This document shows, piece by piece, positions 5,153 through 64,000 of a DNA stretch of 64,000 nucleotides; the first letter of the stretch is position 1, and the number at the start of each line of letters is the position of its first letter. The notes under the pieces were generated by a model, which had not been told where the DNA came from, ran no database searches, and saw only the letters and a list, made by a program, of their open reading frames with translations. The stretch spans positions 297,491-361,490 of IMG/VR virus record IMGVR_UViG_3300034073_005389; one strand, given 5' to 3'. Made by a program: the position numbers and the translations under genes.

Positions 5153-5854
5153 ATGAATAGAATAATTATTTGTGGAAAAGATTATAGCCTTGATTGCCCC
5201 ACTTTAACTTGGAAAGATAAAGGCGGATTTAATGCTTATCCTTACAAAAAGTTTAATTTAAGAAACTTAAAATTAGAAGATTTAAAGAAACAATCTTCTT
5301 GTTTTGTATTGCACCATTCAGTTACTTATACTGCGGCTACTTGCCAAGCCGTTTTAGTAAGCAGGGGTTTATCCTGTACTTTTCTAATTGATGATAATGA
5401 CGTAGATGGATATGCTACATTATATCAAACTTTAGATGTAAAAGAAGGTGCTTGGTCACATGGCGAAATGAATAATTTTGGTGCCGGAGTAGAAATTTGT
5501 TATATGCCCCAAGCATGGGAAAATAAAAATTTGTACTCCGAAAGTAATAGAAAAAAATTTAATGTTCCAGAACACTTTGTAGTGGATGATACAGTTCAAG
5601 GAAGAACATTAAAAGTCTTTGCGCCTACTGAAGCTCAAATAAAAACTTTAAAATGTTTAATTAAAACAGTATGTTCTGCTCTTGATATTCCTATGATTTT
5701 TCCTAAAAATCAGGAAGGAAATATTATTAAAAGTATTTTATCAGATCCTAAACAACATAAAGGATTACTGGGTCATTTTAATATTAGTAAACAAAAAAAC
5801 GACCCAGCAGGTTTAGATTTAGATTATCTTGAAAAATTTTTAAATGAAGAATAG
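5153..5854 (+). CDS. N-acetylmuramoyl-L-alanine amidase (Amidase_2-like)
   Basis: FVLHHS, AWSHG, GVEIC, GHF...KNDP zinc-amidase motifs. Confidence 0.8.
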   Translation: MNRIIICGKDYSLDCPTLTWKDKGGFNAYPYKKFNLRNLKLEDLKKQSSCFVLHHSVTYTAATCQAVLVSRGLSCTFLIDDNDVDGYATLYQTLDVKEGAWSHGEMNNFGAGVEICYMPQAWENKNLYSESNRKKFNVPEHFVVDDTVQGRTLKVFAPTEAQIKTLKCLIKTVCSALDIPMIFPKNQEGNIIKSILSDPKQHKGLLGHFNISKQKNDPAGLDLDYLEKFLNEE

Positions 5855-5934
5855 TTTTTTTATTTGGGGTTCGTTGCCTTACCCTCACTTCTAGTGAGGC
5901 GAGATGACCGATGGGAACCCCTCCTTGAATCACG

Positions 5935-10202: not shown

Positions 10203-10358
10203 CTACTTTTCCTTTGGGGTAATACATATAACCTATGGCAGATAAATGTAAAATAATAAAAAAATAAAATAAATATTTTATATTATCATTGACAGTAAAA
10301 ACTACCATGGCGCATGTAATCAAATTCATAATTAGCGCTGGTAACAAGTTTTCATATT

Positions 10359-10730
10359 TCACTTAAAAACTTCCCATGTTCCATTAGAAAATAAATAAAA
10401 ATAATTCATAACAGAATCAGGAATTTTTTGTTTCATTTCAGAAACTGAAGAATAATTTATAGTTTCATAGATATCGTCTCCTTCTCTTCTATCTCTAGGA
10501 TAAGAGATTACCCAATTAGGAGTAGGACTATGGAAAGAGTGCGGCTCACCAATTTCATGGTTAAGCTCAGAAATTGGTCCTATTTTTATTAAATCTAACA
10601 CCTTATCTAATTTTAGATAAGATTTTTCTAAAATTGATAAGTGGTGCTTAGGATATCCATCCCAATGACAATAAATGCCTTCAATAGAATTGTCTAATTT
10701 AATATAGCCAATAAATGATCTGGTTGACAT
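10359..10730 (-). CDS. Conserved hypothetical phage protein
   Basis: MSTRS.IG...IYCHWDGYP motif. Confidence 0.75.
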   Translation of the reverse strand: MSTRSFIGYIKLDNSIEGIYCHWDGYPKHHLSILEKSYLKLDKVLDLIKIGPISELNHEIGEPHSFHSPTPNWVISYPRDRREGDDIYETINYSSVSEMKQKIPDSVMNYFYLFSNGTWEVFK

Positions 10731-10743
10731 AACTTTCCTTTAG

Positions 10744-10815
10744 AGCAGGCGACAAGACTTGAACTTGCAACATTTCGGATGGAAACCGAAGGCTCTGCCA
10801 TTGAGCTACGCCTGC
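10744..10815 (-). tRNA. tRNA-Gly(TCC)
   Basis: TTCGG-TT-TCC-AT-CCGAA; discriminator T. Confidence 0.9.
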
Positions 10816-10865
10816 AAATACTAAAAACAATATATCAAAACTATTAATAGTTGAATATAACTATT

Positions 10866-11354
10866 ATGAAATATAGTGTTCAAACAAGAATAAATTTTTT
10901 ACAAAAATTTGCTAATCAAAAAACATATTCAATTTATTCAGTAGAGCAATGGAAAAATATATTAAAAAGAGTAGCTGGAAATATTAACAACTCTTTTAAA
11001 GATAGCAAGACTCCTCCAGCTACTTTCTGGGAGAGAAACTATCTTACTGGAAAAGAAACACAATATTCTAATTGCATTATTAAATATGCTATTTTTGATA
11101 AAAATGAATTTCCGGCTATAGTTTTTATGTTTCCCAACCCAGACGTTTTTCGCTCTTGCTATTATAGGGCAGGTGATGGTCCTAAAAGAATGTCTTTAGC
11201 TAAGAAGCTGTTAGAAGAAGCTTTGCTTAAAGAAAATCCACCTATACCTGTTTCAGATTTTGAATATGACTTTAGTGGACAAATAAGTGAGGCAAAAGTG
11301 CCAATAAATTATGATATTCTTATTATCTGCCAACCTAAAGGCATTGGCAAATAA
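10866..11354 (+). CDS. Hypothetical protein (counter-oriented)
   Basis: ATG at 10866; N-terminus RINFLQKFA. Confidence 0.6.
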   Translation: MKYSVQTRINFLQKFANQKTYSIYSVEQWKNILKRVAGNINNSFKDSKTPPATFWERNYLTGKETQYSNCIIKYAIFDKNEFPAIVFMFPNPDVFRSCYYRAGDGPKRMSLAKKLLEEALLKENPPIPVSDFEYDFSGQISEAKVPINYDILIICQPKGIGK

Positions 11355-49869: not shown

Positions 49870-50300
49870 AACCCATACATACTTATCTGCCTATTTACCC
49901 ATTCACACATACATACATTTTTTCTGCCCGCTTACGCACACCCGTATACCCACCAACCATAAACATACTCTCCCATTCATACACACCCCTACTTACACTC
50001 CCCCAATAACCTATAAACTATAATAAATACATTCCACCCAAACTAACTACCCAATATCTCAATACCTACACCCCCACACACATCTATATGCAAAATTTAT
50101 TCTACCTATACCTTATACAATACCACTATTCCTTATTTCCATAACTTACATTTCTCCCGCCCCCATTCTTTATTTCCCTAAATCTGCACCCCATTTCTTT
50201 CTTATTTCTACTTATTTATAAAATAGATTATGTAGTTTAGTGTATATGTGTATTGATGTGTCTATGTTTGTGTGCAGTATAATAAATAAAAAAAGTTTGT
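49870..50300. other. Non-coding strand-skewed boundary segment
   Basis: About 350 nt nearly G-free (C/A/T) on +, flipping to C-poor G/T-rich at about 50225; no ORFs. Confidence 0.7.
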
Positions 50301-50451
50301 TTTTGGCTAGGGCAAAAACCATTGTGTGCAGTTGTTTGAATCTATGCCTAAATGTGTTTTGCGCCCTAGCCAAAAAGCATTTTTTTTAGGGCTAGGGCTT
50401 ATGCCACACCCAATTGCCAACCGAATGCATTTATCCAAAAACACAAACACA

Positions 50452-50557
50452 AAAAAAAAAGCCAATGGCGGGATTTCCGCCATTGGCTTTCACACACGCA
50501 AAAAAAGACAAAAAAAAAGACAAAAAAAAAGCCCCAGCGCATTGGCGCTGGGGCTTT
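50452..50557 (-). terminator. Two tandem intrinsic terminators closing the GC-rich cassette region
   Basis: GCCAATGGCGG..CCGCCATTGGC and GCCCCAGCGC..GCGCTGGGGC, each preceded on + by long A runs. Confidence 0.8.
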
Positions 50558-50577
50558 GGGAGACGGTCAGTCAGGTT

Positions 50578-50925
50578 TCACCGAGCGATGCGCTCGACTC
50601 CGCCATTCTGACCACGCTGGGCGTGGAATCGCGTCTTGTCTCCCAAGTAATCCGCGATCTTCTTAGAGAATTCCCCGAACTGAGTGAACGAAACACCCTT
50701 TCCGAGAAGGTACTGGAACGCTTCGCCCACCACCAGGGGCTTGGGCATGCGTTTGTTATCGTGACGGTCAAAGACCGAGTTGACGGCTTCGCGGATGAGT
50801 TCGAACTCATCCGCCGAAGCGGACTCGAAAGCGATGAGGTCTTGCATGAACTTGTGGAGCGTTTGCTCGTGATCGATGGAACCATCATCCGAGCGAACCA
50901 CGTAGCTAGCGAGATTGATCTCCAT
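50578..50925 (-). CDS. Winged-helix-like protein (GC-rich copy)
   Basis: SYVVRSDDGSIDHEQTL.KFM.DL...IADYL...RGQNGG; GGAGG RBS. Confidence 0.7.
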   Translation of the reverse strand: MEINLASYVVRSDDGSIDHEQTLHKFMQDLIAFESASADEFELIREAVNSVFDRHDNKRMPKPLVVGEAFQYLLGKGVSFTQFGEFSKKIADYLGDKTRFHAQRGQNGGVERIAR

Positions 50926-51222
50926 GACTGTATCCTCCGAAGGGCGTTGCGGCGTGATTGCCTGCCCTCAATATTGGTTCTGCAGGTTGACCGATGGGTG
51001 CAACCGGGACAAAAAAACCTTTACTCAGGGGCATGTTGACCGATGGGTACAATCCATCTAAAAAACCAAAACCCCCGTTGAATAGCAGAGGTTGACCGAT
51101 GGGCGCTTTGACGCGCAGGTACATTGTAGATTAGAGGTTGACCGATGGGAACCCGATTGCACTTGGCAAAAAAAAATCCCAGGTGCCTAAGCACCTGGGA
51201 TAAGATAAGACTCACTTTAGTA

Positions 51223-51396
51223 CTAGCTGGTTCGCACCTGGTAACCCACCGCCTTCTCCAGGCTCTTGTCGGTTTGGCTCAGGTTCAGCTTGAGCGCTTC
51301 CTTACGAGCCGTAAGCAAACACTCGTACACCTTCACCACCGACTCAGACAAGGAGTTGCTTTCCAGGTCCAGCTGCAGACGAACGATCTTGTACAT
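51223..51396 (-). CDS. Cassette hypothetical protein
   Basis: AGGAGG RBS, start MYKIV. Confidence 0.6.
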   Translation of the reverse strand: MYKIVRLQLDLESNSLSESVVKVYECLLTARKEALKLNLSQTDKSLEKAVGYQVRTS

Positions 51397-51518
51397 AGAG
51401 CCTCCTATCAGGAATGACCCTGACACAGTAGTATTGCCTGGTTGACCGATGGGTGCGATCCATTAAAACTTGCTCAGGTACAGATGTACCTGAGCAAGTT
51501 AGGCTAAGCTACTACCTG

Positions 51519-52079
51519 TCAGCCGTGAGAGAAGCTGACCTTGGTGGGTCGGGTTGCCATCAGCTTGAAGTCGCTGGTGAACGTACGCTCCTTCATCACA
51601 GGTCCAGAACGCTTACCCATCACCCTGGCGATTGCCTCGTCACGGTCCACTTCCATCGTGATGTGATTAGTGGAGCCGTCTTTGTTGGTGATCTTGGAGT
51701 CAATCACCCCTCGACAACCTGGCGGTCCAGCATCTAGCTTGCGATCCACCCACCTGGACGCTTCCCCACTCATGTAGAAACCCATCTCCTCCAACACTCC
51801 ACCCTTCGCATCGTAGATGCAGGCGTTGATGGGCTTCTGCACCTTCTCACGCTGGCGTGTAGCCTTGGCTTCCTGCTTCTTCTCAGGAACCCTGAGAAGG
51901 TCTTGCAAGACCGCCTCTTGCACCAGCTTGAGCGCTGGCGTCGGATACAGCTCTCCCTTCTCCAGGCGAGCCAGAATCGAGACAGCCTCGGGAATCCCCG
52001 AAAGGAACTCCCTTTGAGCCTGCAAGAAAGCGGCAGCGGAAACCTTACCAGCGGACTGACGCAGGAACTTCTTGTGCAT
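51519..52079 (-). CDS. Cassette hypothetical protein
   Basis: GGAGG RBS, start MHKKF. Confidence 0.7.
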   Translation of the reverse strand: MHKKFLRQSAGKVSAAAFLQAQREFLSGIPEAVSILARLEKGELYPTPALKLVQEAVLQDLLRVPEKKQEAKATRQREKVQKPINACIYDAKGGVLEEMGFYMSGEASRWVDRKLDAGPPGCRGVIDSKITNKDGSTNHITMEVDRDEAIARVMGKRSGPVMKERTFTSDFKLMATRPTKVSFSHG

Positions 52080-52189
52080 AGGAACCTCCAAACAAAGCCG
52101 TGATTGGCTCACCTATGTTTGTGCAAGTTGACCGATGGGTTCAAGCCACTGAAAACGCTCTTGAGACCATGTGGTCTCAAGAGCCTAGA

Positions 52190-52399
52190 CTAGAAGCTCA
52201 AAGGCGATCCATCCTCGTGTTCAGACTCCTCCGGCAACATGTCAATGAATGGGGCTGCCGTCTCCCAATCATCCTCACAGGCACCTCCCCTGAGGTTGAG
52301 CGTGTGAATACGCTCAAAATCAGGAATATAGCTGTCCATCTCATCTTCCAACATGGGGACGGATCGAGGAACGTATTGCTTTCCCATAACTACCTCCAT
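52190..52399 (-). CDS. Cassette acidic hypothetical protein
   Basis: Between motif 52432 and 3' hairpin. Confidence 0.55.
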   Translation of the reverse strand: MEVVMGKQYVPRSVPMLEDEMDSYIPDFERIHTLNLRGGACEDDWETAAPFIDMLPEESEHEDGSPLSF

Positions 52400-52528
52400 G
52401 AACCATGATTGGTTCACAATAGGTTTAGCAAGTTGACCGATGGGCTACCTGGATTGCACTCAACAAAAAAAAACGCCCTAGTACTCGTGTGTGAGTACTA
52501 GAGCGTTTAGGTGTGTGAGACTGTTTAG

Positions 52529-53110
52529 TTACACGCCGAGAGCAGCAAGCCGCTCATCGATGTTATTGATGCGTTCTTGTTCCCACGCTTCCGCACCAGG
52601 ATCATCTTGGTTGTGAGCGTGTAGCAGTGCTTCCACTGCCACTCGACGCTGAGCAATCAAGTTGTCAATCTCTCGCTGCCTGGGATTGGGCATACCTTTG
52701 ACGTAGCCCTGCAAGGTAGCTTGAGCGGTTGGTGCTGGAGACTTGCCGTATCGCTCTTGTTGGATCAAGTACCTGGCTCGTTGCCTGGCACGATCCAACT
52801 GCAAGCTGTACAGCTCACCAGTGTATGCGCCCGTGAACTTCTCAATGGCTCTGATGATTTCTTTCTTTGTCTCCGCTTCGGACTTTTCCTTGTTTGCCAG
52901 ATTGCACTCATGGATGAACGTTTTAGCGTCCTCCAAGGTTGCAACCTTGGTCGGCATGGGCGGAGGCGTTTGAGCAGGCTTGACAGGCTTGCTTACCACC
53001 TTTCGCTCCTCGGGAATGGTCCGGATTTGGATTGTCTGACGCTTCTCTTGCAACTTGGCAAGAGACGCAGCATACAACGCAATCATTTCGCGGAGATCGA
53101 CTTTGTTCAT
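52529..53110 (-). CDS. Cassette hypothetical protein
   Basis: GGAG RBS, start MNKVD. Confidence 0.7.
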   Translation of the reverse strand: MNKVDLREMIALYAASLAKLQEKRQTIQIRTIPEERKVVSKPVKPAQTPPPMPTKVATLEDAKTFIHECNLANKEKSEAETKKEIIRAIEKFTGAYTGELYSLQLDRARQRARYLIQQERYGKSPAPTAQATLQGYVKGMPNPRQREIDNLIAQRRVAVEALLHAHNQDDPGAEAWEQERINNIDERLAALGV

Positions 53111-53231
53111 GTTTACTCCAATCCACTGACAAGTGCCAGTAGACACCTATGGTTGTGCTGGTTGACCGATGGGTGTGAGCCGCTGAAACAAAATGCTCAG
53201 GTCTATATAGACCTGAGCACCTGTCAACTCG

Positions 53232-53480
53232 TCACCTCTCGTCAGTGAGAACCATCACGAACTCCTTGTCAAGCAAGATCTTGAGCGCATCATCCTGTTC
53301 GGATGGATGCAGCTGTACTTCCAAGGGGAAGAATCGGCTCCAATCATAGGCTCGAACCCGGTATTCTTCCGGCTCACCTGCACAGTCCCAAGTAGGACCT
53401 TTGGCTGGAACATAGTCCAGCTCCAGGTCTACGGTAATGGTTTTGTGGTTGCGTACGATCTGCATCTGAATGTCTTTCAT
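53232..53480 (-). CDS. Cassette hypothetical protein
   Basis: AGGAGG RBS. Confidence 0.65.
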   Translation of the reverse strand: MKDIQMQIVRNHKTITVDLELDYVPAKGPTWDCAGEPEEYRVRAYDWSRFFPLEVQLHPSEQDDALKILLDKEFVMVLTDER

Positions 53481-53574
53481 AAAACCTCCTGGGTCAATGG
53501 TGGTGTAGTAAGTTGACCGATGGGTGCATACAACTGAAAACGCTCATGGAACCATATGGATCCATGAGCATAAA

Positions 53575-53820
53575 CTAGATGATGTTGAGCCTGCTCCAAA
53601 ACCTTTGGCTTTCTTTCCCTACCTCACACAGAGGCAAAGGAGCGACTTCATTTTGAGCAAGCATGCGCCTGACTTTACGCCCTTCCTGGTCCTCCTTGAA
53701 ACCAGGAAGGCAAATAAAGTCTCTGGAAACGGCTTCAGAGAATGCGTCCTCCAACGCAATCTCGAACTGTTTCTCAGACTCGAACTTATAGCCACTGATA
53801 GTGTAAATGCACTGTGCCAT
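53575..53820 (-). CDS. Cassette hypothetical protein
   Basis: GGAGG RBS, start MAQCI. Confidence 0.6.
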   Translation of the reverse strand: MAQCIYTISGYKFESEKQFEIALEDAFSEAVSRDFICLPGFKEDQEGRKVRRMLAQNEVAPLPLCEVGKESQRFWSRLNII

Positions 53821-53939
53821 AAATAGCACCTCCGTAACCTACTTACTGCTTGTTGACCGATGGGTTACCTGGATTGAACTTAACAAAAAAACCCAGGCTT
53901 ACATGGACTCATTAGAATCCACATAAACCTGGGCTCTCA

Positions 53940-54167
53940 CTACCTCACCAACACGAAGGTGTTGGGTTGACCCAGCCAGCTGTTGAGCTGGGTCGCCATC
54001 TGCCTTGCATCTTGGTATGTGTACTCTTGTACACGAGTTATGCCGTTGCGAGTGTCTCGCAACTTCCAACCTTTCTCCTCGAACAATGCCAGGAAACAAT
54101 CCTGGCAAATCGGCTTGCAGTTGAACTTGCATGTGCTTGCGCTTTTATCACACATCTGGCAGTTCAT
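53940..54167 (-). CDS. Cassette Zn-finger-like protein
   Basis: CQMC...CQDC. Confidence 0.6.
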   Translation of the reverse strand: MNCQMCDKSASTCKFNCKPICQDCFLALFEEKGWKLRDTRNGITRVQEYTYQDARQMATQLNSWLGQPNTFVLVR

Positions 54168-54280
54168 AATGCCTTTCCATCTACTCTGTTTGGTGAGTAG
54201 ACACCTATACCTATCTATGTTGACCGATGGGTGCACACAACTGAAACGTTGTGCAGGAGTTGCCTCCTGCACAACCTTTC

Positions 54281-54739
54281 TCAGTAGTCGTCGCGACCCG
54301 ACCACCGATCCTGTTCCATGTACTGCATGTACCTCTCCTCCTCGTTCCAGTGCTCGTAGGGTCGCATCATACGAGCGTTGTAGTCTCTGAGTACCGACTC
54401 CAGCGCCTCCCGCTTGGCGTGGAGCCTGTTGATGTAGGCGTCTCGCTGCGCCTCCATCTCTTCGTTCACCTGCTCTCGTAGGTGATCGCGCTCCTCCTTG
54501 GTCAAGTCGCGACCAAGAGCAGACTCACGACTACAGAACTCCTCATACGCACGCTCTTGGAAGAGGTCATCCTCCATCTCACGTGCGTGGTCGTCCCAGT
54601 GGTAACGCTCGATCTGAGCATTGGTATCATTCCACTGAGAGGCGAGACCCTTGATGATCTCCTCCTTTGCCTGAGCGATCAGGCGCTCGTGGTCCGTAGC
54701 GTTTTCGGGGCACTCGATGTTGATCACGTATCCACGCAT
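54281..54739 (-). CDS. Cassette acidic protein, paralog of 45425-45865
   Basis: RPYEHWNEEERYMQYME. Confidence 0.7.
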   Translation of the reverse strand: MRGYVINIECPENATDHERLIAQAKEEIIKGLASQWNDTNAQIERYHWDDHAREMEDDLFQERAYEEFCSRESALGRDLTKEERDHLREQVNEEMEAQRDAYINRLHAKREALESVLRDYNARMMRPYEHWNEEERYMQYMEQDRWSGRDDY

Positions 54740-54867
54740 ATCAGCCTCCAGACAAGCCTTGATTGGCTCACTTATGTTTTTGCATGTTGACCGATGGGTA
54801 CAGCCCACTGAAAAAAAACCGTGTCAGGAAATTCCTGACACGGCTAGGTATGTACGCTAGTTGGCGA

Positions 54868-55074
54868 TCACTTGACCTTGATCACCAGACCGTTTTGCAC
54901 GGTCACCTCTGCGTACCAGGTATGGGGCTGCGGGTAGTGCGGTCCACCTACCGCAGTAGTCCCATTCTCTGGCGGGTTGCCGAGACCAGGTGCGTAAATA
55001 TGCACCGGTTTCCCGGCAGCCACATCATCCTTGAGTTGCTTCTTGGTCTTGTAGTTCTTGGTGGTGTAGAACAC
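54868..55074 (-). CDS. Cassette conserved small phage protein
   Basis: KTKKQLK...GPHYPQPHTWYA. Confidence 0.75.
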   Translation of the reverse strand: MFYTTKNYKTKKQLKDDVAAGKPVHIYAPGLGNPPENGTTAVGGPHYPQPHTWYAEVTVQNGLVIKVK

Positions 55075-55202
55075 TGAACCCTCCTAGACAAAGCCGTGAT
55101 TGGCTCAATGGTAGTTGTGCAGGTTGACCGATGGGTACGGACCACTGAAACATGCTTGGAAGCATTCGCTTCCAAGCACGTTTTGTTGAGAGTGTTGTTA
55201 GA

Positions 55203-56827
55203 TTACTTCTTGTTGCTCTCCTTGTAGAGTACGATCAGCTGTTCGTATACCTGGCTGTGATGGTACAATCCTTCCTGCCATTCCAGCAGGAGTTTTTTCA
55301 CCCTTTCCTGCTGAATCTCGTTGAGAGCGTTGTACAGGTACAGACCTGGCAGTTCCCCATCCCACAGCTGGGTGAGAAGCCTCTCCTCTTCCATGACCAG
55401 AGCCTTGATCTTCTGGTCGTACGCCAACTGCTTGCGCAGCTTGGCGATACGGTTTTTGATCTGGTGTACGGTGTTGCGGTTGCGGTTGCTCATGTGAGAC
55501 TCCGAGAAAGCCGTGTGTGGAGTTGTACGGCTCACATACAGTTATGCGGGTTGACCGATGGGTTAACTTGTTTGCATTTAACAAAAAAAACCCTTGGCTT
55601 GCTTGCGCAAACCAAGGGCTTTATCACTGCAACGAAAGCAAGAACATCTCTCCTTTCTGAGTGAAAGACTTGAGAATCATACCGCCAGCCATGGAGTAAA
55701 CTCCAAGGTCTGTGCCAGGATGAACTTTGCTGTTGAACTTTGCCACACGATCTCCATTGGGAGCCATGTAGGCAATGGTCAGCCCTTGCTCCAGGGCTTT
55801 CTCGAACTCAACGTGGCTAATCTGCATAGCTACCTCCTCGTATTGAAGTATGTATATTGACCGATGGGTGCAAACAACTAAAACTGCAAGCACCTGATTG
55901 CTCAGGTGCTTGCAAGAGTCAGTACATGCTGATGCTGTTCTCAATCTCTTGGTCTTGGCTCAACCGAGCCGCCTCCTTCCAGCGGCGCTGAACCATCCAA
56001 CGGGTGACCAGCCCGTTGTACTTGAATGCTTTTTCGCACGCTTCTACGGTTTTCCGCCATGCCTCTGCCGCCTTTTGGTTACCGGTGGCGGCAGCGAACT
56101 GCCCCTCCACCGAAGCCAGGATGGAGAGAGAGATGAAAGGCGTGCTGGATCGCATGATCTTCATGTTTATCTCCTAGAGCCATTGGTTGATTGGCTCACT
56201 TGTAGTTGTGCAGGTTGACCGATGGGTACATACCACTAAAACTGCAAGTACCTGATTGCTCAGGTACTTGCGTGTTTCATGAGTTCACGTATTCCTCCTC
56301 TGCCTTATTGATGATGCGGTGCGCCAAGTTGTCAATCTCATCCATCTCTGCCTCGGTGGCTTGGTCGAGCGCACCCGCAGACACAAGCTCCATCACCTTC
56401 AGATGAAGGTTGCCGATGTTATGGCAACCATTCACGTAGTTGTATTCTCCTCGGATCTTTCCGAAATGGTTCTTGTTACAAGCAAACCCGTTGTTACGGA
56501 GATGCTTGATGACCAGGGGGATCAGCCTACCCAGTTGCATAACTTGCCTTTCCGAGCCATAGTGGCTCACTTATGTTTTTGGAAGTTGACCGATGGGTAC
56601 AACCAACTGAAACATGCTCAGGATTGCTCCTAAGCATGCTTGTCTCAGAGAGATAGGCGAGATACCACCCTGCACCCCTGACGAACCAACGAGGCAAACA
56701 TGCGCTCCCAGTTGTCCTCAGAGACGAGCATGGTTGCCTCGTCTCCTTCTTTGGTAATGTACCACAGGCGTACATTACATTTTTCTTTGATCCCAGGGCT
56801 AACTGCCCTGGGTTTTAGCTTACTCAC
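55203..56827 (-). other. Five single-gene cassettes with small hypothetical proteins
   Basis: 55203-55493, 55624-55827, 55919-56164, 56277-56540, 56645-56827; each between a motif copy and a 3' hairpin. Confidence 0.6.
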
Positions 56828-57039
56828 GTCTACTTATCCTTTCTTGCGTGAACAATAGTCCAACGCAAAGAAAAAGAACCCCATAGAACATGAAGTCAAA
56901 TAACTCCATAACTATGTTTGTACATGTTGACCGATGGGTGCGAACCATTGAAACAAGAACCCAGGATTGCTGTTGCAATCCTGGGTTCTTATCTGCTCAC
57001 CCACCGGAATCCGTTAGGACTCAACAGTGGGTGAGTGTG

Positions 57040-57900
57040 TCAACCGAGCGCCAGCTTCGCCAGGGCGATTGCGCCCTCCCGACTGCGGGCGCCGCCGATG
57101 AACCGTGCGTTGTGGCAGAATACGGAATCATGAACTCCAGTCACTGCCGCCAGCTGTTCGTTTCGTAGCCCCGCCCATGCCTCGGGGAGCGGTCGGCGTT
57201 GCCCGAAGCTCCCCATGCTGGGCGGAACGCACTGGACCAGCCAGTCGTCCGCTTGGGGGAACACGAGGAAGAGCGCGTGGGTGCTCTCCTCCACCACCGT
57301 CTGCATGACCGGCATGAACCGGTCCAGAACGATGATCTTCCCCTCGATTGCGTTGGAGATGGCGTGGCGAGCGCCCTCCAACGCGAGCATCCGACCCTGC
57401 GCAGAGGCGATCACCCTGCGCAGGTGTGCCTCTGCAAACTCGACGGCGCGGGCGAATGCGTCGTCGAAGTTTTGCGCCTCGTGCCAGCAGGGGTTGAACC
57501 CGCTGACCACATCAGAGAAGGTGTGGTGATCCACACCTTCAGTAATGCTGCGGGTGCCGTACCCGCAGTCGAGGGCGTCAACCGCCCAGATGAGGTCGCT
57601 TTCGACCTCCCCCTCCACGCCGGGGGCGATGGAAGCACCAAAGTGCTTCCACACGAGACCGGCGCTGCTGTAGGGCACCCCATTGGGGCGCACGCCAGCG
57701 CCCCCCTTCTGGTGGTGGTCGAATCGTAGCGTGGTGGGGTCATAGACCCCTCCCACGTCCACAACAACCATCCCCATCTCGATCACCTTGGGATCGCGGG
57801 TCCGGATAACCGGACCCTCGAACCCCGCCATGCGCAAAATAGCGCAGGCGAGAACGTCGTCGGCGTGGAAGGGACCATTGTGAGTGACAATACTGCTCAT
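57040..57900 (-). CDS. MYG1/UPF0160-family DHH exonuclease
   Basis: THNGPFHADD, RTRD, DVGGVYD, FDHHQ, SSAGLVW, FCH. Confidence 0.9.
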   Translation of the reverse strand: MSSIVTHNGPFHADDVLACAILRMAGFEGPVIRTRDPKVIEMGMVVVDVGGVYDPTTLRFDHHQKGGAGVRPNGVPYSSAGLVWKHFGASIAPGVEGEVESDLIWAVDALDCGYGTRSITEGVDHHTFSDVVSGFNPCWHEAQNFDDAFARAVEFAEAHLRRVIASAQGRMLALEGARHAISNAIEGKIIVLDRFMPVMQTVVEESTHALFLVFPQADDWLVQCVPPSMGSFGQRRPLPEAWAGLRNEQLAAVTGVHDSVFCHNARFIGGARSREGAIALAKLALG

Positions 57901-58032
57901 GTGAGCCTCCTAGAAAGCCGTGTGTGAAGTTGTACGGCTCACATACAGTTGTGCAAGTTGACCGATGGGTACAAGCCATGTAGAAAATCGGTGAGTCAGA
58001 ATCTCGAAAGACTCAATGACTCACCGAGTGTG

Positions 58033-58506
58033 TCAACCGTAGAGCGTTCGGAGGGTCGCGCAAACGCGCGTCGCCTCCGATTGTTGGAACCGCTCCACTT
58101 TCTGGAGCAGTTCGATTGACTCTTCCCGGTCCATGCCGGGAAGCTGACGGAGTGCCAGCAACAGCAGTTTGCTGCTGGCGGTGGGTGCGCCGTCGAAGCG
58201 CACCACCTCACCGTTGAGGGTGAGGGAGAAGGGCTCATCGCCCTCCTCGCCCTCGCCCTCGCCCTCATTGCCGAGTGCCTCACCGAGTGACCATGCGGTC
58301 ACTCGGTGGGAGGAGGTGCCTGAGTGCCCGTCAAGGCGCACCGACACCCCCTCCTCGTGGGTGAGGGTAAGAACTGCGGGGAGGAGTAACGTACTCCTCC
58401 CGATGTGGTGCCTGAACGAGCCGAGGACAATCGCCCCCAGCTCGTTCAGCACCACCTGGCGGGGTTCAAACCCCGCCATGGCTGCGAAACCAGTTGCAAT
58501 AATCAT
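58033..58506 (-). CDS. Cassette hypothetical protein
   Basis: AGGAGG RBS, start MIIAT. Confidence 0.6.
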   Translation of the reverse strand: MIIATGFAAMAGFEPRQVVLNELGAIVLGSFRHHIGRSTLLLPAVLTLTHEEGVSVRLDGHSGTSSHRVTAWSLGEALGNEGEGEGEEGDEPFSLTLNGEVVRFDGAPTASSKLLLLALRQLPGMDREESIELLQKVERFQQSEATRVCATLRTLYG

Positions 58507-58680
58507 TGCAACCTCCTTGCAGAGTCTATCCACTACCCGTAATAGATCAGCATGACCTGTCATCAGGTAACAGCTTCGACTCTCACATACAGTTGTGCAA
58601 GTTGACCGATGGGTACAAGCCATGTAGAATCAGTGAGCCGGAATCCCGAAGGACTCAACAGCTCACTGATTCCGGGACAC

Positions 58681-58911
58681 CTACAGATCGTAGACGCCCC
58701 GTTGTCCCACGATTGACCAAGAGGAGTACTCCTCTTGGTCAATCATGGTTGTGTGTCCGACGATGAGGTTTTCAAACCTCTCGTCGGTCACCAGTTTGTA
58801 GGCGTCGCCACGTAGCAACGCCTTTGCCGCCCGCATGGCGAGCGGCAGAGGGAGACCCGTCTTTCGACGGATCTCCCTCCCCAAAACCACACGTCTTCGT
58901 TTCAGTGTCAT
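58681..58911 (-). CDS. Cassette basic hypothetical protein
   Basis: GGAGG RBS, start MTLKRRR. Confidence 0.6.
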   Translation of the reverse strand: MTLKRRRVVLGREIRRKTGLPLPLAMRAAKALLRGDAYKLVTDERFENLIVGHTTMIDQEEYSSWSIVGQRGVYDL

Positions 58912-59059
58912 TTGACACCTCCACTTACTTGTTTGCAAGTTGACCGATGGGTGCGTGCCAGTTAGATTGACCAGCCGGAATCCCGAAGGACTCAACAGCT
59001 GGTCAATACTACCCCCTCACTGAAGCTCAACCCTCTCAGGGAACTTCAGTGAGGGACCT

Positions 59060-59407
59060 TCACACCTCACACCAGGGAATAGTCTCCCTGGTGAAATCCT
59101 CCTCCACCTCATGCCAGCCGAACTGGTCGGCATGAGGTGAAACCCTCCCCACGTAGCGGACCAAACGAAATGGTCCGCTGTGGGGGTAGTCCGTATCGTA
59201 CGCGGCGGACTCTTCGTCCACCTCGTACGCCACCACCCACGCCATTCCGGCGTGGAAGCCACGCGCCCACGGGGGCGCGTCGTCGCCCCGAAGAGCCCAG
59301 AGCCCTTCGGGGTGGGTATAGAGGAGGTCACGGACCTCCTCCATGGTGGGGATGGGGAGGTCCGTCTCCGGAACCTCCCCATCCCAATCAGGAAACATCA
59401 CCCTCAT
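59060..59407 (-). CDS. Cassette acidic hypothetical protein
   Basis: AGGAGG RBS, start MRVMF. Confidence 0.65.
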   Translation of the reverse strand: MRVMFPDWDGEVPETDLPIPTMEEVRDLLYTHPEGLWALRGDDAPPWARGFHAGMAWVVAYEVDEESAAYDTDYPHSGPFRLVRYVGRVSPHADQFGWHEVEEDFTRETIPWCEV

Positions 59408-59575
59408 GGTGACCTCCTTGTAGAGTCTATCCACTACCCGCAACAGATCACCACGATCTATTATCAGGCAGTAGCTTCGACCCTCACATACAGTTATGCA
59501 AGTTGACCGATGGGTGCACGCCAGTTAGATTGACCAGCCGGAATCCCGAAGGACTCAACAGCTGGTCAATCTCAC

Positions 59576-59797
59576 TCACTGCGGGAGGAAGCTCCGAAGA
59601 GCCTCCATCGCCACAGCGAGGGTTGCGCCCCCGCCCGTGCGGTCCCACGCCCCTCGGGCGTGGTTCTCCGCTGCTGGCACGTAGGTGACGTGCCAGCAGC
59701 GCCCGCAGGCGCACCCATCCGGGGAAGGTGGCGTGATCTCCACCTTCCCCGGACCCCAGGCGGCACAAGCCGCCTGTACCAGAGATTCGAAGTCCAT
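59576..59797 (-). CDS. Cassette hypothetical protein
   Basis: AGGAGG RBS, start MDFES. Confidence 0.6.
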   Translation of the reverse strand: MDFESLVQAACAAWGPGKVEITPPSPDGCACGRCWHVTYVPAAENHARGAWDRTGGGATLAVAMEALRSFLPQ

Positions 59798-59972
59798 GTG
59801 GACCTCCTCAGAGAGCGTATCCACTACCCGCAATAGATCACCACGATCTATCATCAGATAGAGGTTTCCACCCTCACATGCAGTTATGCAGGTTGACCGA
59901 TGGGTGCGAGCAGTGTAGAAACTCGGCAAGCCGGAATCCCTTACGGGACTCAACAGCTTGCCGAGGGGGGAG

Positions 59973-60185
59973 TCAATGAAGCTTGAAAAGCTTCATTGCC
60001 TCCCCCGCTGTCATTTTTTGCGGGAAGTCGTATTCATATACGACCCCCGCTACGTCGTACGTGAGTCCGAGGTACACAAGTACCTCGGACTCTGGGGGGA
60101 GGACTGCCAGCCTCTGGCAGTCCTCCCCGTGCAAATATGGATAGCCCCATAAATCGGGGCTCATCCACTCGTAGAATTCCTCCAT
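59973..60185 (-). CDS. Cassette protein, paralog of 61286-61489
   Basis: M.EFYE...LP..SEV.VY.G..Y...G.VY....P..MTA.EA.K.F. Confidence 0.7.
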   Translation of the reverse strand: MEEFYEWMSPDLWGYPYLHGEDCQRLAVLPPESEVLVYLGLTYDVAGVVYEYDFPQKMTAGEAMKLFKLH

Positions 60186-60447
60186 GGAATTCTCCTTAGA
60201 GAGCGTATCCACTACCCGCAATAGATCACCATAATCCATTATCAGGTAACAGCTTCAACTCTCACATACAGTTACGCAGGTTGACCGATGGGTGCAAGCC
60301 ATGTATATTAACAAAAAAATTGAAATACTCATATACTCTTGTGTGAAAAGAAATAAGTAACTTATACAAGTTGACCGATGGGTGCAAGCCGTGTAGAGTA
60401 ACGAGCCGGAATCCTTTGCAGGACTCAACGACTCGTCACTCGCATTG

Positions 60448-61110
60448 TTACTTGCGATTTTTCTTGCCACCAAAGTGGCTCAGAAAACTCGCAATCGCAC
60501 CCGCCGATGCGGGCTCACCTCGCACCGGAGGCGGAGGGGGAGGAGGAGGGGGAGGAGGAGGAGGGGGAGGGTATTCTGAATAATACCTCTCCTTATAATA
60601 CTCCTCCTTCAATCCCCCTGCACTCATGACAAAGCGCGAATACGCGATTTTGTCATGAAAGTTCTCCCAAGAGACCGACCAATCAGCCTCAATTGGGAGA
60701 ACCAGCCACTCTTTGCTGCGGTTTCCATACCGGGACGTGCTCAAATCCCGGTGAAGTTTACACCCCCGGAACACCGGGTCCCCCAGGGTGTAGCGTTTCC
60801 CCCCTTGGGGGATTGCCCTGACCGTGACGCATTGCGCCACGATCAGATCGTCGGCAGCCTTTTCAGCTGCCTTGCGTGCGGCTTCTTCAGCCGCTTTGGC
60901 TGCTTGCGCAGCCTCCCGCGCAGCTGCCTGCGCCGCCCGCTCCGCCCGCTCCTCCGCCAGACGAGCCTCTACCTGGGCGGCAAATGCCGGGTCCAGGTAG
61001 CTCCTTCCCGCCGCCCCGATAGGCGGCGGAGCCGCTTGCCCCCACGGATCGTAGGAGCCGCGCTGCGTGCCGGGCTCCTCCCCGTTGAGATAACGGTTCC
61101 AGTCACCCAT
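60448..61110 (-). CDS. Cassette protein with Ala/Glu/Lys helix and poly-Pro tract
   Basis: GGAGG RBS; AAEEAARKAAEK; run of about 14 Pro. Confidence 0.7.
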   Translation of the reverse strand: MGDWNRYLNGEEPGTQRGSYDPWGQAAPPPIGAAGRSYLDPAFAAQVEARLAEERAERAAQAAAREAAQAAKAAEEAARKAAEKAADDLIVAQCVTVRAIPQGGKRYTLGDPVFRGCKLHRDLSTSRYGNRSKEWLVLPIEADWSVSWENFHDKIAYSRFVMSAGGLKEEYYKERYYSEYPPPPPPPPPPPPPPPVRGEPASAGAIASFLSHFGGKKNRK

Positions 61111-61285
61111 AGGTGACCTCCTTGTAGAGTCTATCCACTACCCGCAATAGATCACCATGATCTATTATCAGGTAGAGGCTTCCACTCTCACATGCAGTTA
61201 TGCAGGTTGACCGATGGGTGCGAGCAGTGTAGAAACTCGACAAGCCGGAATCCCTTGCGAGACTCAACGGCTTGCCGAGCGACGG

Positions 61286-61489
61286 TCAGAGGAAGGCTTT
61301 TTGAGCCTCCTCTGCCGTCATTACTTCCGGGGCGCCGTGTTGGTACACGTACCCCGACATTTCGTATTCAATTCCGAAGTACACGCGTACTTCGGAATCG
61401 ATCGGGAGGGCGCGGAGGCGGACTTTATCCGCCTCCGCGAGCCAGGCGCGACCTACGTCGCCCCCCCCGCACTCGTAGAATTCCTGCAT
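61286..61489 (-). CDS. Cassette protein, paralog of 59973-60185
   Basis: See paralog alignment; AAGGAG RBS. Confidence 0.7.
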   Translation of the reverse strand: MQEFYECGGGDVGRAWLAEADKVRLRALPIDSEVRVYFGIEYEMSGYVYQHGAPEVMTAEEAQKAFL

Positions 61490-61804
61490 GGAATTCTCCT
61501 TAGAGAGCGTATCCACTACCCGTAACAGATCACCACGATCTATTATCAGATAGGGGCTTCCACTCTCACATATAGTTGTGCAGGTTGACCGATGGGTGCA
61601 GACCATGTATATTAACAAAAAAATTGAAGCAATCAACCGCTACTCGGTATTACTTGCGTGCCTTGTCGAGAAAATAATAAGTAAATAAATAAATACAAAA
61701 CAATAACTTGAATAGCCATAGATTCAAATAAGTTGACCGATGGGTGCAAACCACCAAAACTTGAACCCCCGGACTCACCTATACAGATGAGCCGGGGGTC
61801 CATC

Positions 61805-62035
61805 TCAGTCGGCACCTCCTTTCTCGGTTGCGGTGGCGGCGGTGGCGTACCCGTGGAACCACGGGTCGCCACCACCGATGAGGTGGGCGTCGGAGGCTGC
61901 CCAGTCAGCCTCCGACATGTTGTTGAGGGCGCGGGGACCCCAGTAGGGTCCCGCCCCCGAACCAAAGGTAAAGGCGTCACCTGGGGACGCCTCTACCTCC
62001 CAGGTTTTACCCTGGAAAACAACGACGCACTTCAT
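61805..62035 (-). CDS. Cassette hypothetical protein
   Basis: Between motif 62096 and 3' hairpin. Confidence 0.55.
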   Translation of the reverse strand: MKCVVVFQGKTWEVEASPGDAFTFGSGAGPYWGPRALNNMSEADWAASDAHLIGGGDPWFHGYATAATATEKGGAD

Positions 62036-62259
62036 GTGCGCCCCTTTCTGAGAGCCTCGGCGGGATTGCCATAGCTCTCACATACAGTTACGCAGGTTGA
62101 CCGATGGGTGCGAACCATGCAAACAAAAAAGTGGATGGTCTTTCGACCATCCACTCATCTAGCTGCGGTCTCGCTCCAGATTGGTGGAGTCCCCGCTCAG
62201 GACTGCTAGAGTCCCCTCAGGTTACGCCTGAGGACGTTCCCTCGTCACCACCGAGAAGA

Positions 62260-62619
62260 TCAGACGATCTCTCGGAAAGCGACGAACCCGAATACGGCGG
62301 TCTTGGTGACCGAACCGTCAGGGTTCGTCACTTCGACGGAGCGTCGCTCCGTCGTGGTGACGACCACCCGTCGCCCCTTGGAGAGCAGGCTCCGGATGGT
62401 GGTGTAGACCAGGGAGGTTTCTCCCATGATCATCACCACGTCTCCGGGAGCGCATTGCTCCACCAAAGTGGCGGCGAGGGTGGCAACTTCCGCCATGGTG
62501 GCGGAAGCGGGGACGTTCGGGAACGCGATGTCCCTGATGTCCCCGCCGAGCGCCTTGGCGGCGCTCAGCTGGTCCTCGCCCCACTTCTGGGACGGGTGGT
62601 TAGAAATGTTCACAAACAT
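62260..62619 (-). CDS. csx20: Csx20-like CRISPR-associated (putative ring nuclease) protein
   Basis: FVNISNHPS.KW...Q..AA..G.I.D..FP.V, MGE, TTER, K...F.FV.FRE pattern recalled for Csx20-type proteins. Confidence 0.65.
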   Translation of the reverse strand: MFVNISNHPSQKWGEDQLSAAKALGGDIRDIAFPNVPASATMAEVATLAATLVEQCAPGDVVMIMGETSLVYTTIRSLLSKGRRVVVTTTERRSVEVTNPDGSVTKTAVFGFVAFREIV

Positions 62620-63149
62620 TTCCAACCTTCCTATCGGCTTGATCGGGCTCCTCTATCAAGCCCAGCCGATAACCCTACCACAAGCGATGAATCAACATGA
62701 CTCATCATCAAGCGGCAGGCTCACTTATAGTTGTGCAGGTTGACCGATGGGTGCAGACCCCTGAAATAAAAAACCCCCCGGTCACTCCTGCCCACTATCA
62801 CCCGGTGCCTTTCAGCGTTGGTGAAGTGTTTTTATGGCAATAATTGGAGGGACCGGGGGGGATGCTAGGTCATAACAGCATCCTCCTATAACTGTCACTT
62901 CACTTAGTAACAGTTACACTAATAGATAAGTATGTTGACCGATGGGTGCGGACCCCTGAAATAAAAAAACCCCGCCACGCTGCAAAGCGTGGCGGGGCAC
63001 AACAGGGCATAGAGATAACCCTTTCCGTAGCCTATAGTAGTAAGATAACTCCTTCCGGCAAAATGCTCCGAAGTTATCTTCGTACCTTAGCTACACTAAT
63101 AGATAAGTATGTTGACCGATGGGTTAACTTGTTTGCATTTAACAAATAA

Positions 63150-63468
63150 AAAAACCCTGACCAGCTTTCGCCAGTCAGGGTTTGTATGAACGGCGTAGGG
63201 ACTCTGCCTCCCTCTTTCACCCTCTAAGTCACGGGCTCCGTTCTACTTGGTCCTTTGAGCATCGCAATGGTGTGCGTGCTCGTTTTTCCTCCGCGCCGAC
63301 CCCAGGGTAGGACTCTTTGCCCCGTATCGGGTTTGCGTGTGCGCTTATCCCGCCCTGTCTATCCAGGTTTCAGGCGGTTCTTTCCCGGCGCGCACAATGG
63401 GTCCTATAAAGGACCGTCAGTAGGGGAACACATAAGTGTCCGAGATCCCCAGATGCAACTAGCATCCT
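63150..63468 (-). ncRNA. Candidate structured non-coding RNA (~320 nt)
   Basis: Between motif 63484 and a terminator; no RBS-led ORF; nested long-range stems. Confidence 0.5.
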
Positions 63469-63616
63469 ACTATAACTCAGTATGTTGACCGATGGGTACA
63501 AACCATGTAGAATCTCGACAAGCCAGAATCCCTTGCGGAACTCAACAGCTTGTCGAGTCTCTCTCCCCACCTCTACCAGAATCCGTTAGGACTCGATGAT
63601 AGAGGTGGGGAGGTGT

Positions 63617-63859
63617 TTACTTGCGGCGGCTAAGCTGGTGGGCTCGCGCCCAGCCAGCCGCCGACGCCGCCCATGCCGCCACCGCCGCCGTGAGGCAGGC
63701 GATGGCGAGCAGGGCGATTCTGGCGGGGGCGTTTTTCGCCCCCGCCGCCCTCGCCGCCCAGTGGGCGGCGAGGGCGCGCCAAAGCGCGCTCCTCTCCGCC
63801 GCCCAGGCGGCGCGCGCCGACCTGAGGTCGGCGCGGATTCGAAAGAGGGACTTTTCCAT
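63617..63859 (-). CDS. Cassette Ala/Arg/Trp-rich small protein
   Basis: Purine-rich RBS, followed by conserved 3' hairpin. Confidence 0.55.
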   Translation of the reverse strand: MEKSLFRIRADLRSARAAWAAERSALWRALAAHWAARAAGAKNAPARIALLAIACLTAAVAAWAASAAGWARAHQLSRRK

Positions 63860-64000
63860 GGTCCCTTCCCTTCAAGCCCCATTGACACCCATAGACAATC
63901 GTCTCTCACCATGAGAGATTGGACTTCTCTGGCATGCCATGCGGCTCATGTATGGTTTGCTAGGTTGACCGATGGGTACAAACCATGTAGAAATTCGACA

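What the first reader, a model, noticed from the sequence alone, without database searches (positions are those of the whole stretch)
63150..63468. ORF-less cassette encoding a candidate ~320-nt structured RNA
Seen on minus: motif promoter, then CTACT..GGTCCTTT pairing with AAAGGACC.AGTAG about 170 nt later, enclosing TGTGCGC/GCGCACA and CCGCCTG/CAGGGCGG stems, then further hairpins and a U-tailed terminator. No RBS-led ORF. It does not match the tmRNA, RNase P or hammerhead signatures I can recognise.
Basis: partly seen in the sequence, partly recalled or inferred. Interest (0 to 1): 0.62.

Follow-up and report, generated by a model that had tools for sequence, protein, structure and literature searches.

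The report
Orphan noncoding RNA cassette in jumbo phage
A giant freshwater phage carries, in a row of tiny self-contained early genes, one unit that has a promoter and a terminator but no protein frame. It most likely makes a ~320-base RNA of an undescribed family, whose sequence is kept almost unchanged between strains and whose job is still unknown.

Summary
On the minus strand, 63497-63146 is a complete transcription unit: one of 50 copies of a phage-specific promoter motif, a ~285-nt body with no credible ORF, and a 14-bp hairpin plus U7 terminator.

Rfam 15 and ARAGORN find no known family.

The window is the last 64 kb of a 361-kb freshwater or subsurface jumbo phage. The unit sits in a GC-rich array of about 35 one-gene cassettes.

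- **For a functional RNA:** a sister strain (L091) differs by 1 base in the 285-nt body, against 5-16% in flanking ORFs. All four known variants fit the fold: two C-to-U changes at G-paired sites, a 2-nt loss in a loop, and a 37-nt self-pairing insert in a loop. A 37-nt core hairpin recurs exactly in otherwise diverged contigs of a salt-lake RNA library.
- **Against over-reading:** the fold (z -3.2) is weaker than that of the coding neighbours (z -7 to -15). No divergent full-length homolog was found, so covariation is untested. Other strains lack the cassette, and transcription of this locus is not shown.

Best guess: an accessory, early, trans-acting RNA, possibly a counter-defence decoy, since a Csx20-like ring-nuclease gene lies just downstream. 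The mechanism is inferred.

The parts
63466..63497 (-). Promoter: 14-nt motif ACCCATCGGTCAAC (63497-63484), a 9-nt spacer, then TATA/GTAGG. The likely start is the G at 63470.
   Evidence: 50 copies, all on the minus strand and only in the last 63 kb of the genome. A downstream box sits at fixed spacing, and copies lie behind terminators and ahead of ORFs. The start site is inferred by analogy, not mapped.
63400..63470 (-). 5' module of three hairpins: GGAUGC/GCAUCU (63467-63451), GGGG..GACAC/GUGUU..CCCC (63450-63423) and GGUCCU/AGGACC (63415-63400).
   Evidence: Pair probabilities are 0.57-0.94. The C-to-U change at 63425 in run X12 turns a G-C pair into G-U in the second hairpin.
63397..63402 (-). 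CCCAUU, a promoter-like remnant 18 nt before the core.
   Evidence: Salt-lake relatives have CCCATCTTTCAC or CCCATCCATCAC at the same place (loose ends). CCCATC is the shared heart of the array promoters in G000, G004 and L093. This is an inference.
63347..63383 (-). Conserved 37-nt core hairpin: CCGCCUG / loop / CAGGGCGG followed by GAUA.
   Evidence: It is identical over 37 nt in one contig of RNA run X20 and differs by 4-5 letters in two others. All three contigs run on into unlike sequence. Inner helices have probability 0.68-0.99.
63320..63337 (-). Second block shared with the salt-lake relative: CGCAAA followed by CCCGAUACGGGG.
   Evidence: The loose end of the X20 contig reads CGCAAAACCGGTACGGGG in the same register.
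63257..63281 (-). Hairpin GAGCA-CGCA / loop CACCAU / UGCG-A-UGCUC.
   Evidence: Probability is 0.95-1.00. The 2-nt loss at 63270 in run X6 falls in its loop.
63188..63243 (-). 3' three-way junction: closing stem GAACGG/CCGUUC, hairpin GCCC/GGGU with a variable loop, and hairpin AGGGA/UCCCU.
   Evidence: Probabilities are 0.94-0.98. L091 carries a 37-nt insert between 63229 and 63228, which folds as an extension of the first hairpin. X6 shows a replacement at the same site.
63146..63183 (-). Intrinsic terminator: 14-bp stem, GAAA loop, seven U.
   Evidence: In strains lacking the RNA body, the same terminator directly follows the upstream ORF cassette.
62752..63123 (-). Two further ORF-less cassettes, A (63123-62947) and B (62946-62752), each with its own promoter and terminator. 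They form one ORF-less block with the RNA.
   Evidence: Cassette A is absent together with the RNA in L101-L104. One X6 contig skips 62755-63482, removing all three.
62260..62625 (-). The next coding cassette, a 121-aa Csx20-like protein. It is context, not part of the RNA.
   Evidence: PADLOC Csx20 at E 7e-21. NCBIfam CAS_Csx20 at E 4e-13, below its cut-off. Homologs carry PF27247.

Best explanation
The locus is a stand-alone gene for a noncoding RNA of about 315-325 nt (about 360 nt in strain L091). It starts near 63470 and ends at the U-tract near 63146.

It is one accessory cassette in a GC-rich array of about 35 self-contained, promoter-led units at the end of an AT-rich 361-kb freshwater jumbo phage. 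The array reads inward from the end of the record, and I take it to be the early, host-takeover region.

The RNA looks like a fusion of two parts: a 5' hairpin module, and an older unit built around a conserved 37-nt hairpin core that still carries a decayed promoter remnant.

I think it acts in trans as an RNA. The conserved core hairpin would serve as a binding site for a host or phage protein, so the RNA would work as a decoy or sponge in counter-defence or host takeover.

**Shown:**
- the anatomy of the unit
- the absence of an ORF
- the absence of any known family
- nucleotide-level conservation
- presence/absence variation among strains

**Inferred:**
- the start site
- early timing
- trans action
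- the protein-binding decoy role

**My odds:**

| Claim | Probability |
|---|---|
| Noncoding RNA gene | about 0.7 |
| Under selection as an RNA | about 0.6 |
| Decoy in counter-defence specifically | about 0.25 |
For: **A complete unit without a frame**
- Promoter motif, body and terminator are all present.
- There is no sense ORF above 31 aa and no ribosome-binding site.

**No known family**
- Rfam and ARAGORN are negative.

**Conservation (G000 against L091)**

| Region | Difference |
|---|---|
| RNA body | 1 substitution in 285 nt (0.4%) |
| Flanking ORFs | 16.5%, 5.2%, 7.9%, 5.6% |
| Synonymous sites of the Csx20-like ORF | 8 synonymous codon changes in 122 codons |

**All four variants are fold-compatible**
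- The change at 63293 makes a G-U or A-U pair.
- The change at 63425 makes a G-U pair.
- The 2-nt loss falls in a hairpin loop.
- The 37-nt insert is self-pairing and sits in a hairpin loop.

**A conserved core elsewhere**
- The 37-nt core recurs exactly in an RNA-library contig from a salt lake. Its flanks are diverged but alignable.

**Context**
- The next coding cassette is a Csx20-like protein.
- Csx20 is a cA4 ring nuclease of type III CRISPR loci (10.1101/2024.09.24.614671).
- RNA-based anti-CRISPRs are known in phages (PMC10651486).
Against: - No divergent full-length homolog was found in IMG/VR, JGI metagenomes, GTDB genomes, INPHARED or 39 related phage records. There is therefore no covariation evidence.
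- The fold z-score (-3.2) is lower in magnitude than that of every GC-rich neighbour.
- Promoters, terminators and UTR modules of the array are equally conserved, at about 0.5%, while the ORFs evolve fast with many non-synonymous changes. Low divergence is therefore not unique to the RNA. It could also reflect recent cassette exchange.
- Strains L101-L104 and one X6 contig lack the cassette, so it is dispensable.
- Expression of this locus is not shown. The X20 contigs are from a relative, and an RNA library can hold DNA.
Confidence: 0.45

Rival explanations
1. It is non-functional filler. Two cassette fragments (a promoter with a 5' leader, and an orphaned promoter-proximal piece) were fused by recombination between promoter repeats. 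The result is transcribed but has no role. It looks conserved only because it spread recently among strains.
For: - The cassette is present or absent among close strains, with break points at the promoter motif.
- A promoter-like remnant lies inside the RNA.
- Empty cassettes and stacked promoters exist in the array at 51149-50999.
- Its fold is unremarkable for this region.
Against: - 0.4% divergence sits beside ORFs at 5-16% on both sides on the same contig. A recent-transfer tract would have to stop exactly at ORF borders.
- All four variants spare the helices.
- The 37-nt core is kept exactly in a distant relative whose flanks have diverged.
Confidence: 0.2
2. It encodes a small protein: the 31-aa frame starting at the AUG at 63465, 5 nt from the start site, or another micro-ORF.
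For: - An AUG lies close to the inferred 5' end, and the frame is intact in G000 and L091.
- Cassette B beside it has a strong ribosome-binding site followed by AUG ACC UAG, so micro-frames occur here.
Against: - There is no ribosome-binding site, and the AUG is not at the very 5' end. It lies inside a hairpin of probability 0.94.
- The frame covers only the first third of the RNA, yet the remaining two thirds are just as conserved.
- The only substitution inside the frame (63425) changes Pro to Leu (my own reading of the codon).
Confidence: 0.07
3. It is a cis-acting element of the array rather than a trans-acting RNA. Candidates are a long 3' extension of the upstream ORF's transcript, a transcriptional insulator, or a DNA-level structure at the genome end.
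For: - In L101-type strains the same terminator ends the upstream ORF cassette, so the body sits between an ORF and its ancestral terminator.
- The whole terminal 7 kb is unusually rich in hairpins on both strands.
Against: - It has its own full promoter copy.
- The upstream cassette already ends in two strong hairpin modules.
- It is less hairpin-rich than its surroundings.
Confidence: 0.1
4. It is a protein gene read with TGA as a sense codon. Frame 2 has four TGA and no TAA or TAG from the AUG to a TAA beyond the terminator.
For: One search shows only TGA stops in that frame.
Against: - About 1 in 12 random frames of this length and composition would lack TAA and TAG (my estimate), and there are three frames.
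- The 37-nt insert in L091 and the 2-nt loss in X6 would shift the frame.
- The frame would run through the terminator.
- The genome's genes are open under code 11, including frames up to 2378 aa and a MYG1 match at E 6e-76.
- No suppressor tRNA is found in the window.
Confidence: 0.01

Closest known systems
RNA anti-CRISPRs (Racrs) and phage crRNA-like RNAs (PMC10651486; 10.1101/2024.10.29.618823)
   Same: - A small phage-encoded noncoding RNA expressed from its own promoter.
- It lies among counter-defence genes, here beside a Csx20-like ring-nuclease homolog.
- Its conserved unit is a hairpin of CRISPR-repeat length (37 nt).
   Different: - Racrs are defined by mimicry of a host CRISPR repeat. 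No CRISPR repeat matching the core was found: 0 exact matches to the central 22-mer of the core in 185,579 species genomes.
- The host is unknown.
- This RNA is about ten times longer than a solitary repeat.
- The phage has no CRISPR array.
Stable phage-encoded RNAs of unknown function, such as T4 species 1 and 2 RNAs, and sRNAs mapped in jumbo-phage transcriptomes (PMC8244752, PMC11512511)
   Same: A discrete, non-tRNA, promoter-to-terminator RNA gene in a large virulent phage that also carries many tRNA genes.
   Different: There is no sequence or Rfam relation. Those RNAs were found by RNA mapping, whereas this one is predicted from sequence only.
6S RNA and other protein-sequestering RNAs (CsrB/RsmZ type)
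   Same: The proposed logic is the same: a structured RNA that titrates a protein. The RNA carries a remnant resembling the array's promoter motif.
   Different: - There is no rod-with-bubble shape.
- There is no Rfam 6S, CsrB or Rsm match above noise.
- GGA motifs are not clearly enriched (my count).
Integron gene-cassette arrays
   Same: - The setting is a long one-directional row of short, independently gained and lost units delimited by a repeated site.
- Empty units occur.
- Content differs between strains.
   Different: - The repeat is a promoter, not an attC recombination site.
- Each unit has its own promoter and terminator.
- No integrase was seen next to the array.

Membership tests
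Any Rfam 15 family (incl. RNase P, tmRNA, 6S, hammerhead and other self-cleavers, group I/II introns, riboswitches, GOLLD/ROOL/HEARO/raiA) | Covariance-model score at or above the family's gathering threshold. | tested here: not met
   Nine gathering-level matches in the window, none in 62600-64000. At E<=10 the only matches overlapping 63146-63470 fall on the terminator hairpin and 3' end (63124-63220): NsiR1 at 25.2 bits against a threshold of 39, plus weaker sub-threshold hits.
tmRNA / tRNA | A tRNA-like domain with acceptor and T arms, and for tmRNA a tag frame. | tested here: not met
   ARAGORN finds 11 tRNAs elsewhere in the window and nothing in 62600-64000.
Riboswitch or other cis-regulatory leader | Lies in the 5' UTR of the gene it controls, on the same transcript. 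| tested here: not met
   The body is followed by a strong terminator and then a new promoter. The next two units are also ORF-less.
Racr (RNA anti-CRISPR) | Sequence and structure mimic of a CRISPR repeat used by the host. | tested here: inconclusive
   Host unknown. The central 22-mer of the 37-nt core has no exact match in GTDB species genomes or IMG/VR. Only exact words were searchable.
Racr (RNA anti-CRISPR) | Inhibits Cas complex formation or crRNA loading. | not testable with these tools
   Needs an assay in a host with a matching CRISPR-Cas system.
Structured noncoding RNA (generic claim) | Compensatory base changes supporting helices across homologs. | tested here: inconclusive
   Only near-identical copies are available. 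There is one one-sided change per helix, no double compensatory change, and no broken pair. Indels fall in loops.
Structured noncoding RNA (generic claim) | Folding energy beyond composition-matched shuffles and beyond local background. | tested here: inconclusive
   z is -3.2 to -4.4 against shuffles. This is weaker than the neighbouring coding cassettes, at z -7 to -15.
Protein-coding cassette | An open frame with a ribosome-binding site, kept in frame among strains. | tested here: not met
   Indels of 37 nt and 2 nt occur among strains.

The most novel reading that the evidence does not exclude
The RNA would be the first described member of a new class of phage counter-defence RNAs, built around a conserved 37-nt hairpin. 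It would be carried in an integron-like early array whose transcripts, coding ones included, are selected for extreme secondary structure.

Together with a phage-borne Csx20-type ring nuclease, this would form a layered strategy against RNA-guided (type III CRISPR) or RNA-sensing immunity. Structured messages would hide from guide RNAs, the ring nuclease would destroy the alarm signal, and decoy RNAs would occupy the effector.
Probability: 0.1. Interest if true: 0.85.

Novelty: new variant of a known kind. Interest (0 to 1): 0.55.

Why it matters
Phage-encoded noncoding RNAs that act on the host are few, and most were found by chance. This candidate is clean: it has defined ends and no family, is strongly constrained, is dispensable, and sits next to a likely anti-CRISPR enzyme in a modular early array. 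That makes it directly testable by deletion, pull-down and structure probing.

The setting may matter more than the RNA. The array shows that a clade of environmental jumbo phages keeps a GC-rich, cassette-built, fast-evolving early region inside an AT-rich genome. Its messages fold far more strongly than chance allows.

Tried and rejected
**Searches for homologs that found nothing**
- Known-family search: Rfam at gathering and at E<=10.
- INPHARED phages: megablast and blastn.
- Paralogues in the own genome.
- BLASTN of the RNA against five large related records.
- Fuzzy scan for the core in all held DNA.

**Exact-word scans**
- Five words from the core or from the salt-lake flank were run in IMG/VR. 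The one match, L106, is a chance hit inside a coding region.
- The same core 22-mer in JGI metagenomes gave only strain L091.
- Two scans of GTDB genomes gave none.

**Covariance model**
- Model R1 of the core (63291-63398) found nothing in 39 related phage records or the fetched arrays.
- The single E=0.26 hit, in G001, appears to lie inside a gene on the opposite strand by my reading of the sequence, so I take it as spurious.

**Indirect routes to homologs**
- Looking for gene-caller artefacts over the RNA, and for homologs of the upstream 80-aa ORF, in the 5.8-billion protein set gave nothing.
- Following Csx20-like homologs into their contigs gave arrays but no RNA homolog.

**Alternative readings rejected**
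- TGA-recoded frame: rejected, see rivals.
- Pseudogene remnant: translated frames, with X at the stops, match nothing held.
- CRISPR array in the phage: none.
- 7-of-8 resemblances to type III crRNA tags that I recalled from memory: dismissed, because matches of that quality are expected by chance in 320 nt.
- Relatives of a virus record cannot be drawn by the genome search.
- PF00940 (T7-type polymerase) gave no hit, but its control did not ring either, so that search says nothing.

**Compliance with operator notes**
- Read laying was given 2,501 letters.
- No other genetic code was adopted.

Full report
**Where the window lies.** The window is the last 64 kb (297,491-361,490) of a 361,490-bp virus record, estimated 97% complete.
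- The genome has about 32% G+C, and nearly all long frames lie on the minus strand.
- It encodes a large terminase, RIIA, an NAD-dependent ligase, a large DNA polymerase and many tRNAs.
- Near-identical DNA occurs in subsurface, freshwater and lake metagenomes from several studies.
- It is an environmental jumbo phage without a close isolate: the best terminase identity in INPHARED is about 26%.
- I found a sigma-70 region 2 match, but no multisubunit RNA polymerase domains.

**The array.**
- The motif CCCATCGGTCAAC, followed after 9-10 nt by a box like TATAAGTGAGG, occurs 50 times. All copies are on the minus strand and all lie in the last 63 kb.
- About 35 copies are packed into 50,000-64,000. 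There G+C rises from about 0.33 to 0.50-0.59.
- In this stretch the DNA is cut into units of 150-1,000 nt. Each unit has the motif, often a 5' hairpin, one short ORF with a ribosome-binding site, and a terminator.
- Position, orientation and spacing make a promoter the natural reading. The polymerase or sigma that reads it is unknown.
- The record ends 24 nt beyond a motif copy, and strain L101 continues 1.4 kb further upstream with more units. The array is therefore cut by the assembly.
- A related phage (G004, terminase 77% identical over the matched part) has the same arrangement: 19 copies of the variant CCATCGATCGAC in a 13-kb stretch of 0.5-0.6 G+C, beside a 0.31-0.38 genome.
- A third type of array (L093) uses CCACCCATCTCGCC. 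CCCATC is the shared core of all three.

**The unit in question.**
- From the motif at 63497-63484, the likely first base is G at 63470.
- The unit ends at a 14-bp hairpin with seven U (63183-63146).
- Between them lie 285 nt in which no sense frame exceeds 31 aa, and none has a ribosome-binding site.
- Rfam and ARAGORN give nothing.

**Is it a structured RNA?** Thermodynamics alone is lukewarm.
- z is -3.2 for the body and -4.4 with the terminator.
- The central part has two competing folds within a few kcal/mol.
- Robust elements in both strains are three 5' hairpins, the core hairpin, the hairpin at 63281-63257, and a 3' three-way junction.

The comparative evidence is better.
- Strain L091 (93% identical overall) differs in the body by a single C-to-U change. 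The ORFs on either side differ by 5-16%, with 8 synonymous codon changes in the 122-codon Csx20-like frame.
- That substitution, and a second one seen in run X12, each leave a G-U or A-U pair.
- A 2-nt loss in run X6 lies in a hairpin loop.
- A 37-nt insert in L091 sits in a hairpin loop and folds onto itself as a stem extension.

Two cautions apply. Four compatible variants are suggestive, not proof. The array's promoters, terminators and UTR modules are conserved to the same degree (about 0.5%), while its ORFs change fast and mostly non-synonymously.

**A conserved core.**
- In a salt-lake metatranscriptome (X20), three contigs match only 63346-63385. One matches exactly over 37 nt, and all then diverge.
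- The reported flanks still align loosely with the window. CCCAT lies about 18 nt upstream, and CGCAAA followed by CCG.UACGGGG lies downstream.
- These are therefore diverged relatives, not chimeras.
- In them the core follows a CCCATC..TCAC motif like the array promoters. In the window the equivalent is a decayed CCCAUU.
- I infer that the present RNA arose by fusing a promoter with a 5' hairpin module onto an older unit that began near the core.
- I could not retrieve these contigs, and every other search for homologs failed (see Tried and rejected). Covariation therefore remains untested.

**Dispensability.**
- Strains L101-L104 join the upstream cassette directly to the terminator at 63181. 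They also lack cassette A.
- One X6 contig skips 62755-63482 and has a 29-nt mini-unit in its place.
- Break points lie at the ACCC of the promoter motif.
- The RNA is thus an accessory cassette, gained or lost by recombination between promoter copies.

**What it does.** There is no direct evidence. The context is as follows:
- It lies in the terminal, presumably early, part of the genome.
- It forms a block of three ORF-less units.
- The next gene is a Csx20 homolog. Csx20 is a cA4 ring nuclease, and viral ring nucleases are known anti-CRISPRs.

Phage RNAs that disarm CRISPR by mimicry are known. I therefore favour a trans-acting decoy whose conserved hairpin binds a protein, with low confidence in the specific target. 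The rivals are a recombination by-product, a micro-protein and a cis element. Each is scored separately in its own section.

**Verdict.** This is a real, well-delimited, ORF-less transcription unit, most likely a gene for a new noncoding RNA under purifying selection. Its fold is plausible but unproven, and its function is unknown. The surrounding array is at least as noteworthy as the RNA itself.

Noticed in passing
window 57000-64000, both strands: The terminal 7 kb is hyper-structured. For 150-nt windows the mean MFE z is -5.1 on the minus strand, with 83% below -3, and -4.1 on the plus strand (Wilcoxon p 0.006). The rest of the window gives -1.2 to -2.0, and a GC-matched control phage (L106) gives -0.9. 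Whole cassettes reach z -13.7 and -15.3. They are built of consecutive near-perfect hairpins inside real ORFs. A related array (L093) shares this (mean -3.5), but G004's does not. Between strains most substitutions break the predicted pairs, yet the overall folding energy stays high.
   Followed up: partly
window 62260-62625 (-): A 121-aa stand-alone Csx20-like protein sits in the early array: PADLOC E 7e-21, NCBIfam E 4e-13 (below its cut-off), and homologs carry PF27247. Csx20 is a cA4 ring nuclease, so this is a candidate phage anti-type-III-CRISPR enzyme. Homologs lie in similar GC-rich arrays in other metagenomes.
   Followed up: partly
window 62752-62946 (-), cassette B: This ORF-less unit carries a strong ribosome-binding site followed by AUG ACC UAG, a two-codon frame inside a hairpin. 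The frame is conserved in L091 and L101. It recalls the two-codon bar minigenes of phage lambda (from memory, not tested). Cassette A (63123-62947) is a further ORF-less hairpin RNA unit.
   Followed up: no
window 50999-51150 (-) and the X6 joint 62755/63482: Promoter copies are stacked 46-56 nt apart with almost nothing between them, which I read as empty cassettes. The same mini-unit replaces the three ORF-less cassettes in one strain. This suggests cassette turnover by recombination between promoter repeats.
   Followed up: partly
window cassettes with promoters at 61596, 61218, 60292, 59904, 59514, 58613 (-): Six different ORF cassettes share a conserved 5' leader of about 85 nt, beginning GTGAGAGTGGAAGCC and containing CTGATAATAGATCGTGGTGATCTG. 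It may be a common regulatory leader.
   Followed up: no
window 57040-57900 (-): A MYG1/UPF0160-family exonuclease homolog (Pfam E 6e-76) is one of the array cassettes. Its coding sequence folds with z about -6.7.
   Followed up: no
window 61805-63859 ORFs, against L091: The array ORFs evolve fast and mostly by amino-acid changes: 20 non-synonymous against 7 synonymous codons, 16 against 3, and 9 against 8. All non-coding modules are nearly invariant.
   Followed up: partly
window 1-46000: Eleven tRNA genes lie here, all on the minus strand and nearly all reading A/U-ending codons: Leu-UAA four times, Arg-UCU twice, Ile-UAU, Gln-UUG, Tyr-GUA, Gly-UCC and Leu-CAA. There is also a group I intron match at 630-824. 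The tRNA set fits an AT-rich phage in a GC-richer host, and the GC-rich early array may match host codon usage.
   Followed up: no
L092 (G004:C1) 10340-10980 and 5670-6160 (-): The related phage's array also has ORF-less units. One ends in five tandem copies of a 17-nt unit (GATGCCTTACAAGCGGC) and has a duplicated 18-nt unit. Another holds tRNA-like sequences, including an ARAGORN call with an abnormal anticodon loop.
   Followed up: no
G000:C1:28299-28415 (-): This is the only sigma-70 region 2 match in the genome, in a 235-aa frame. It may be the factor that reads one of the phage's promoter classes.
   Followed up: no
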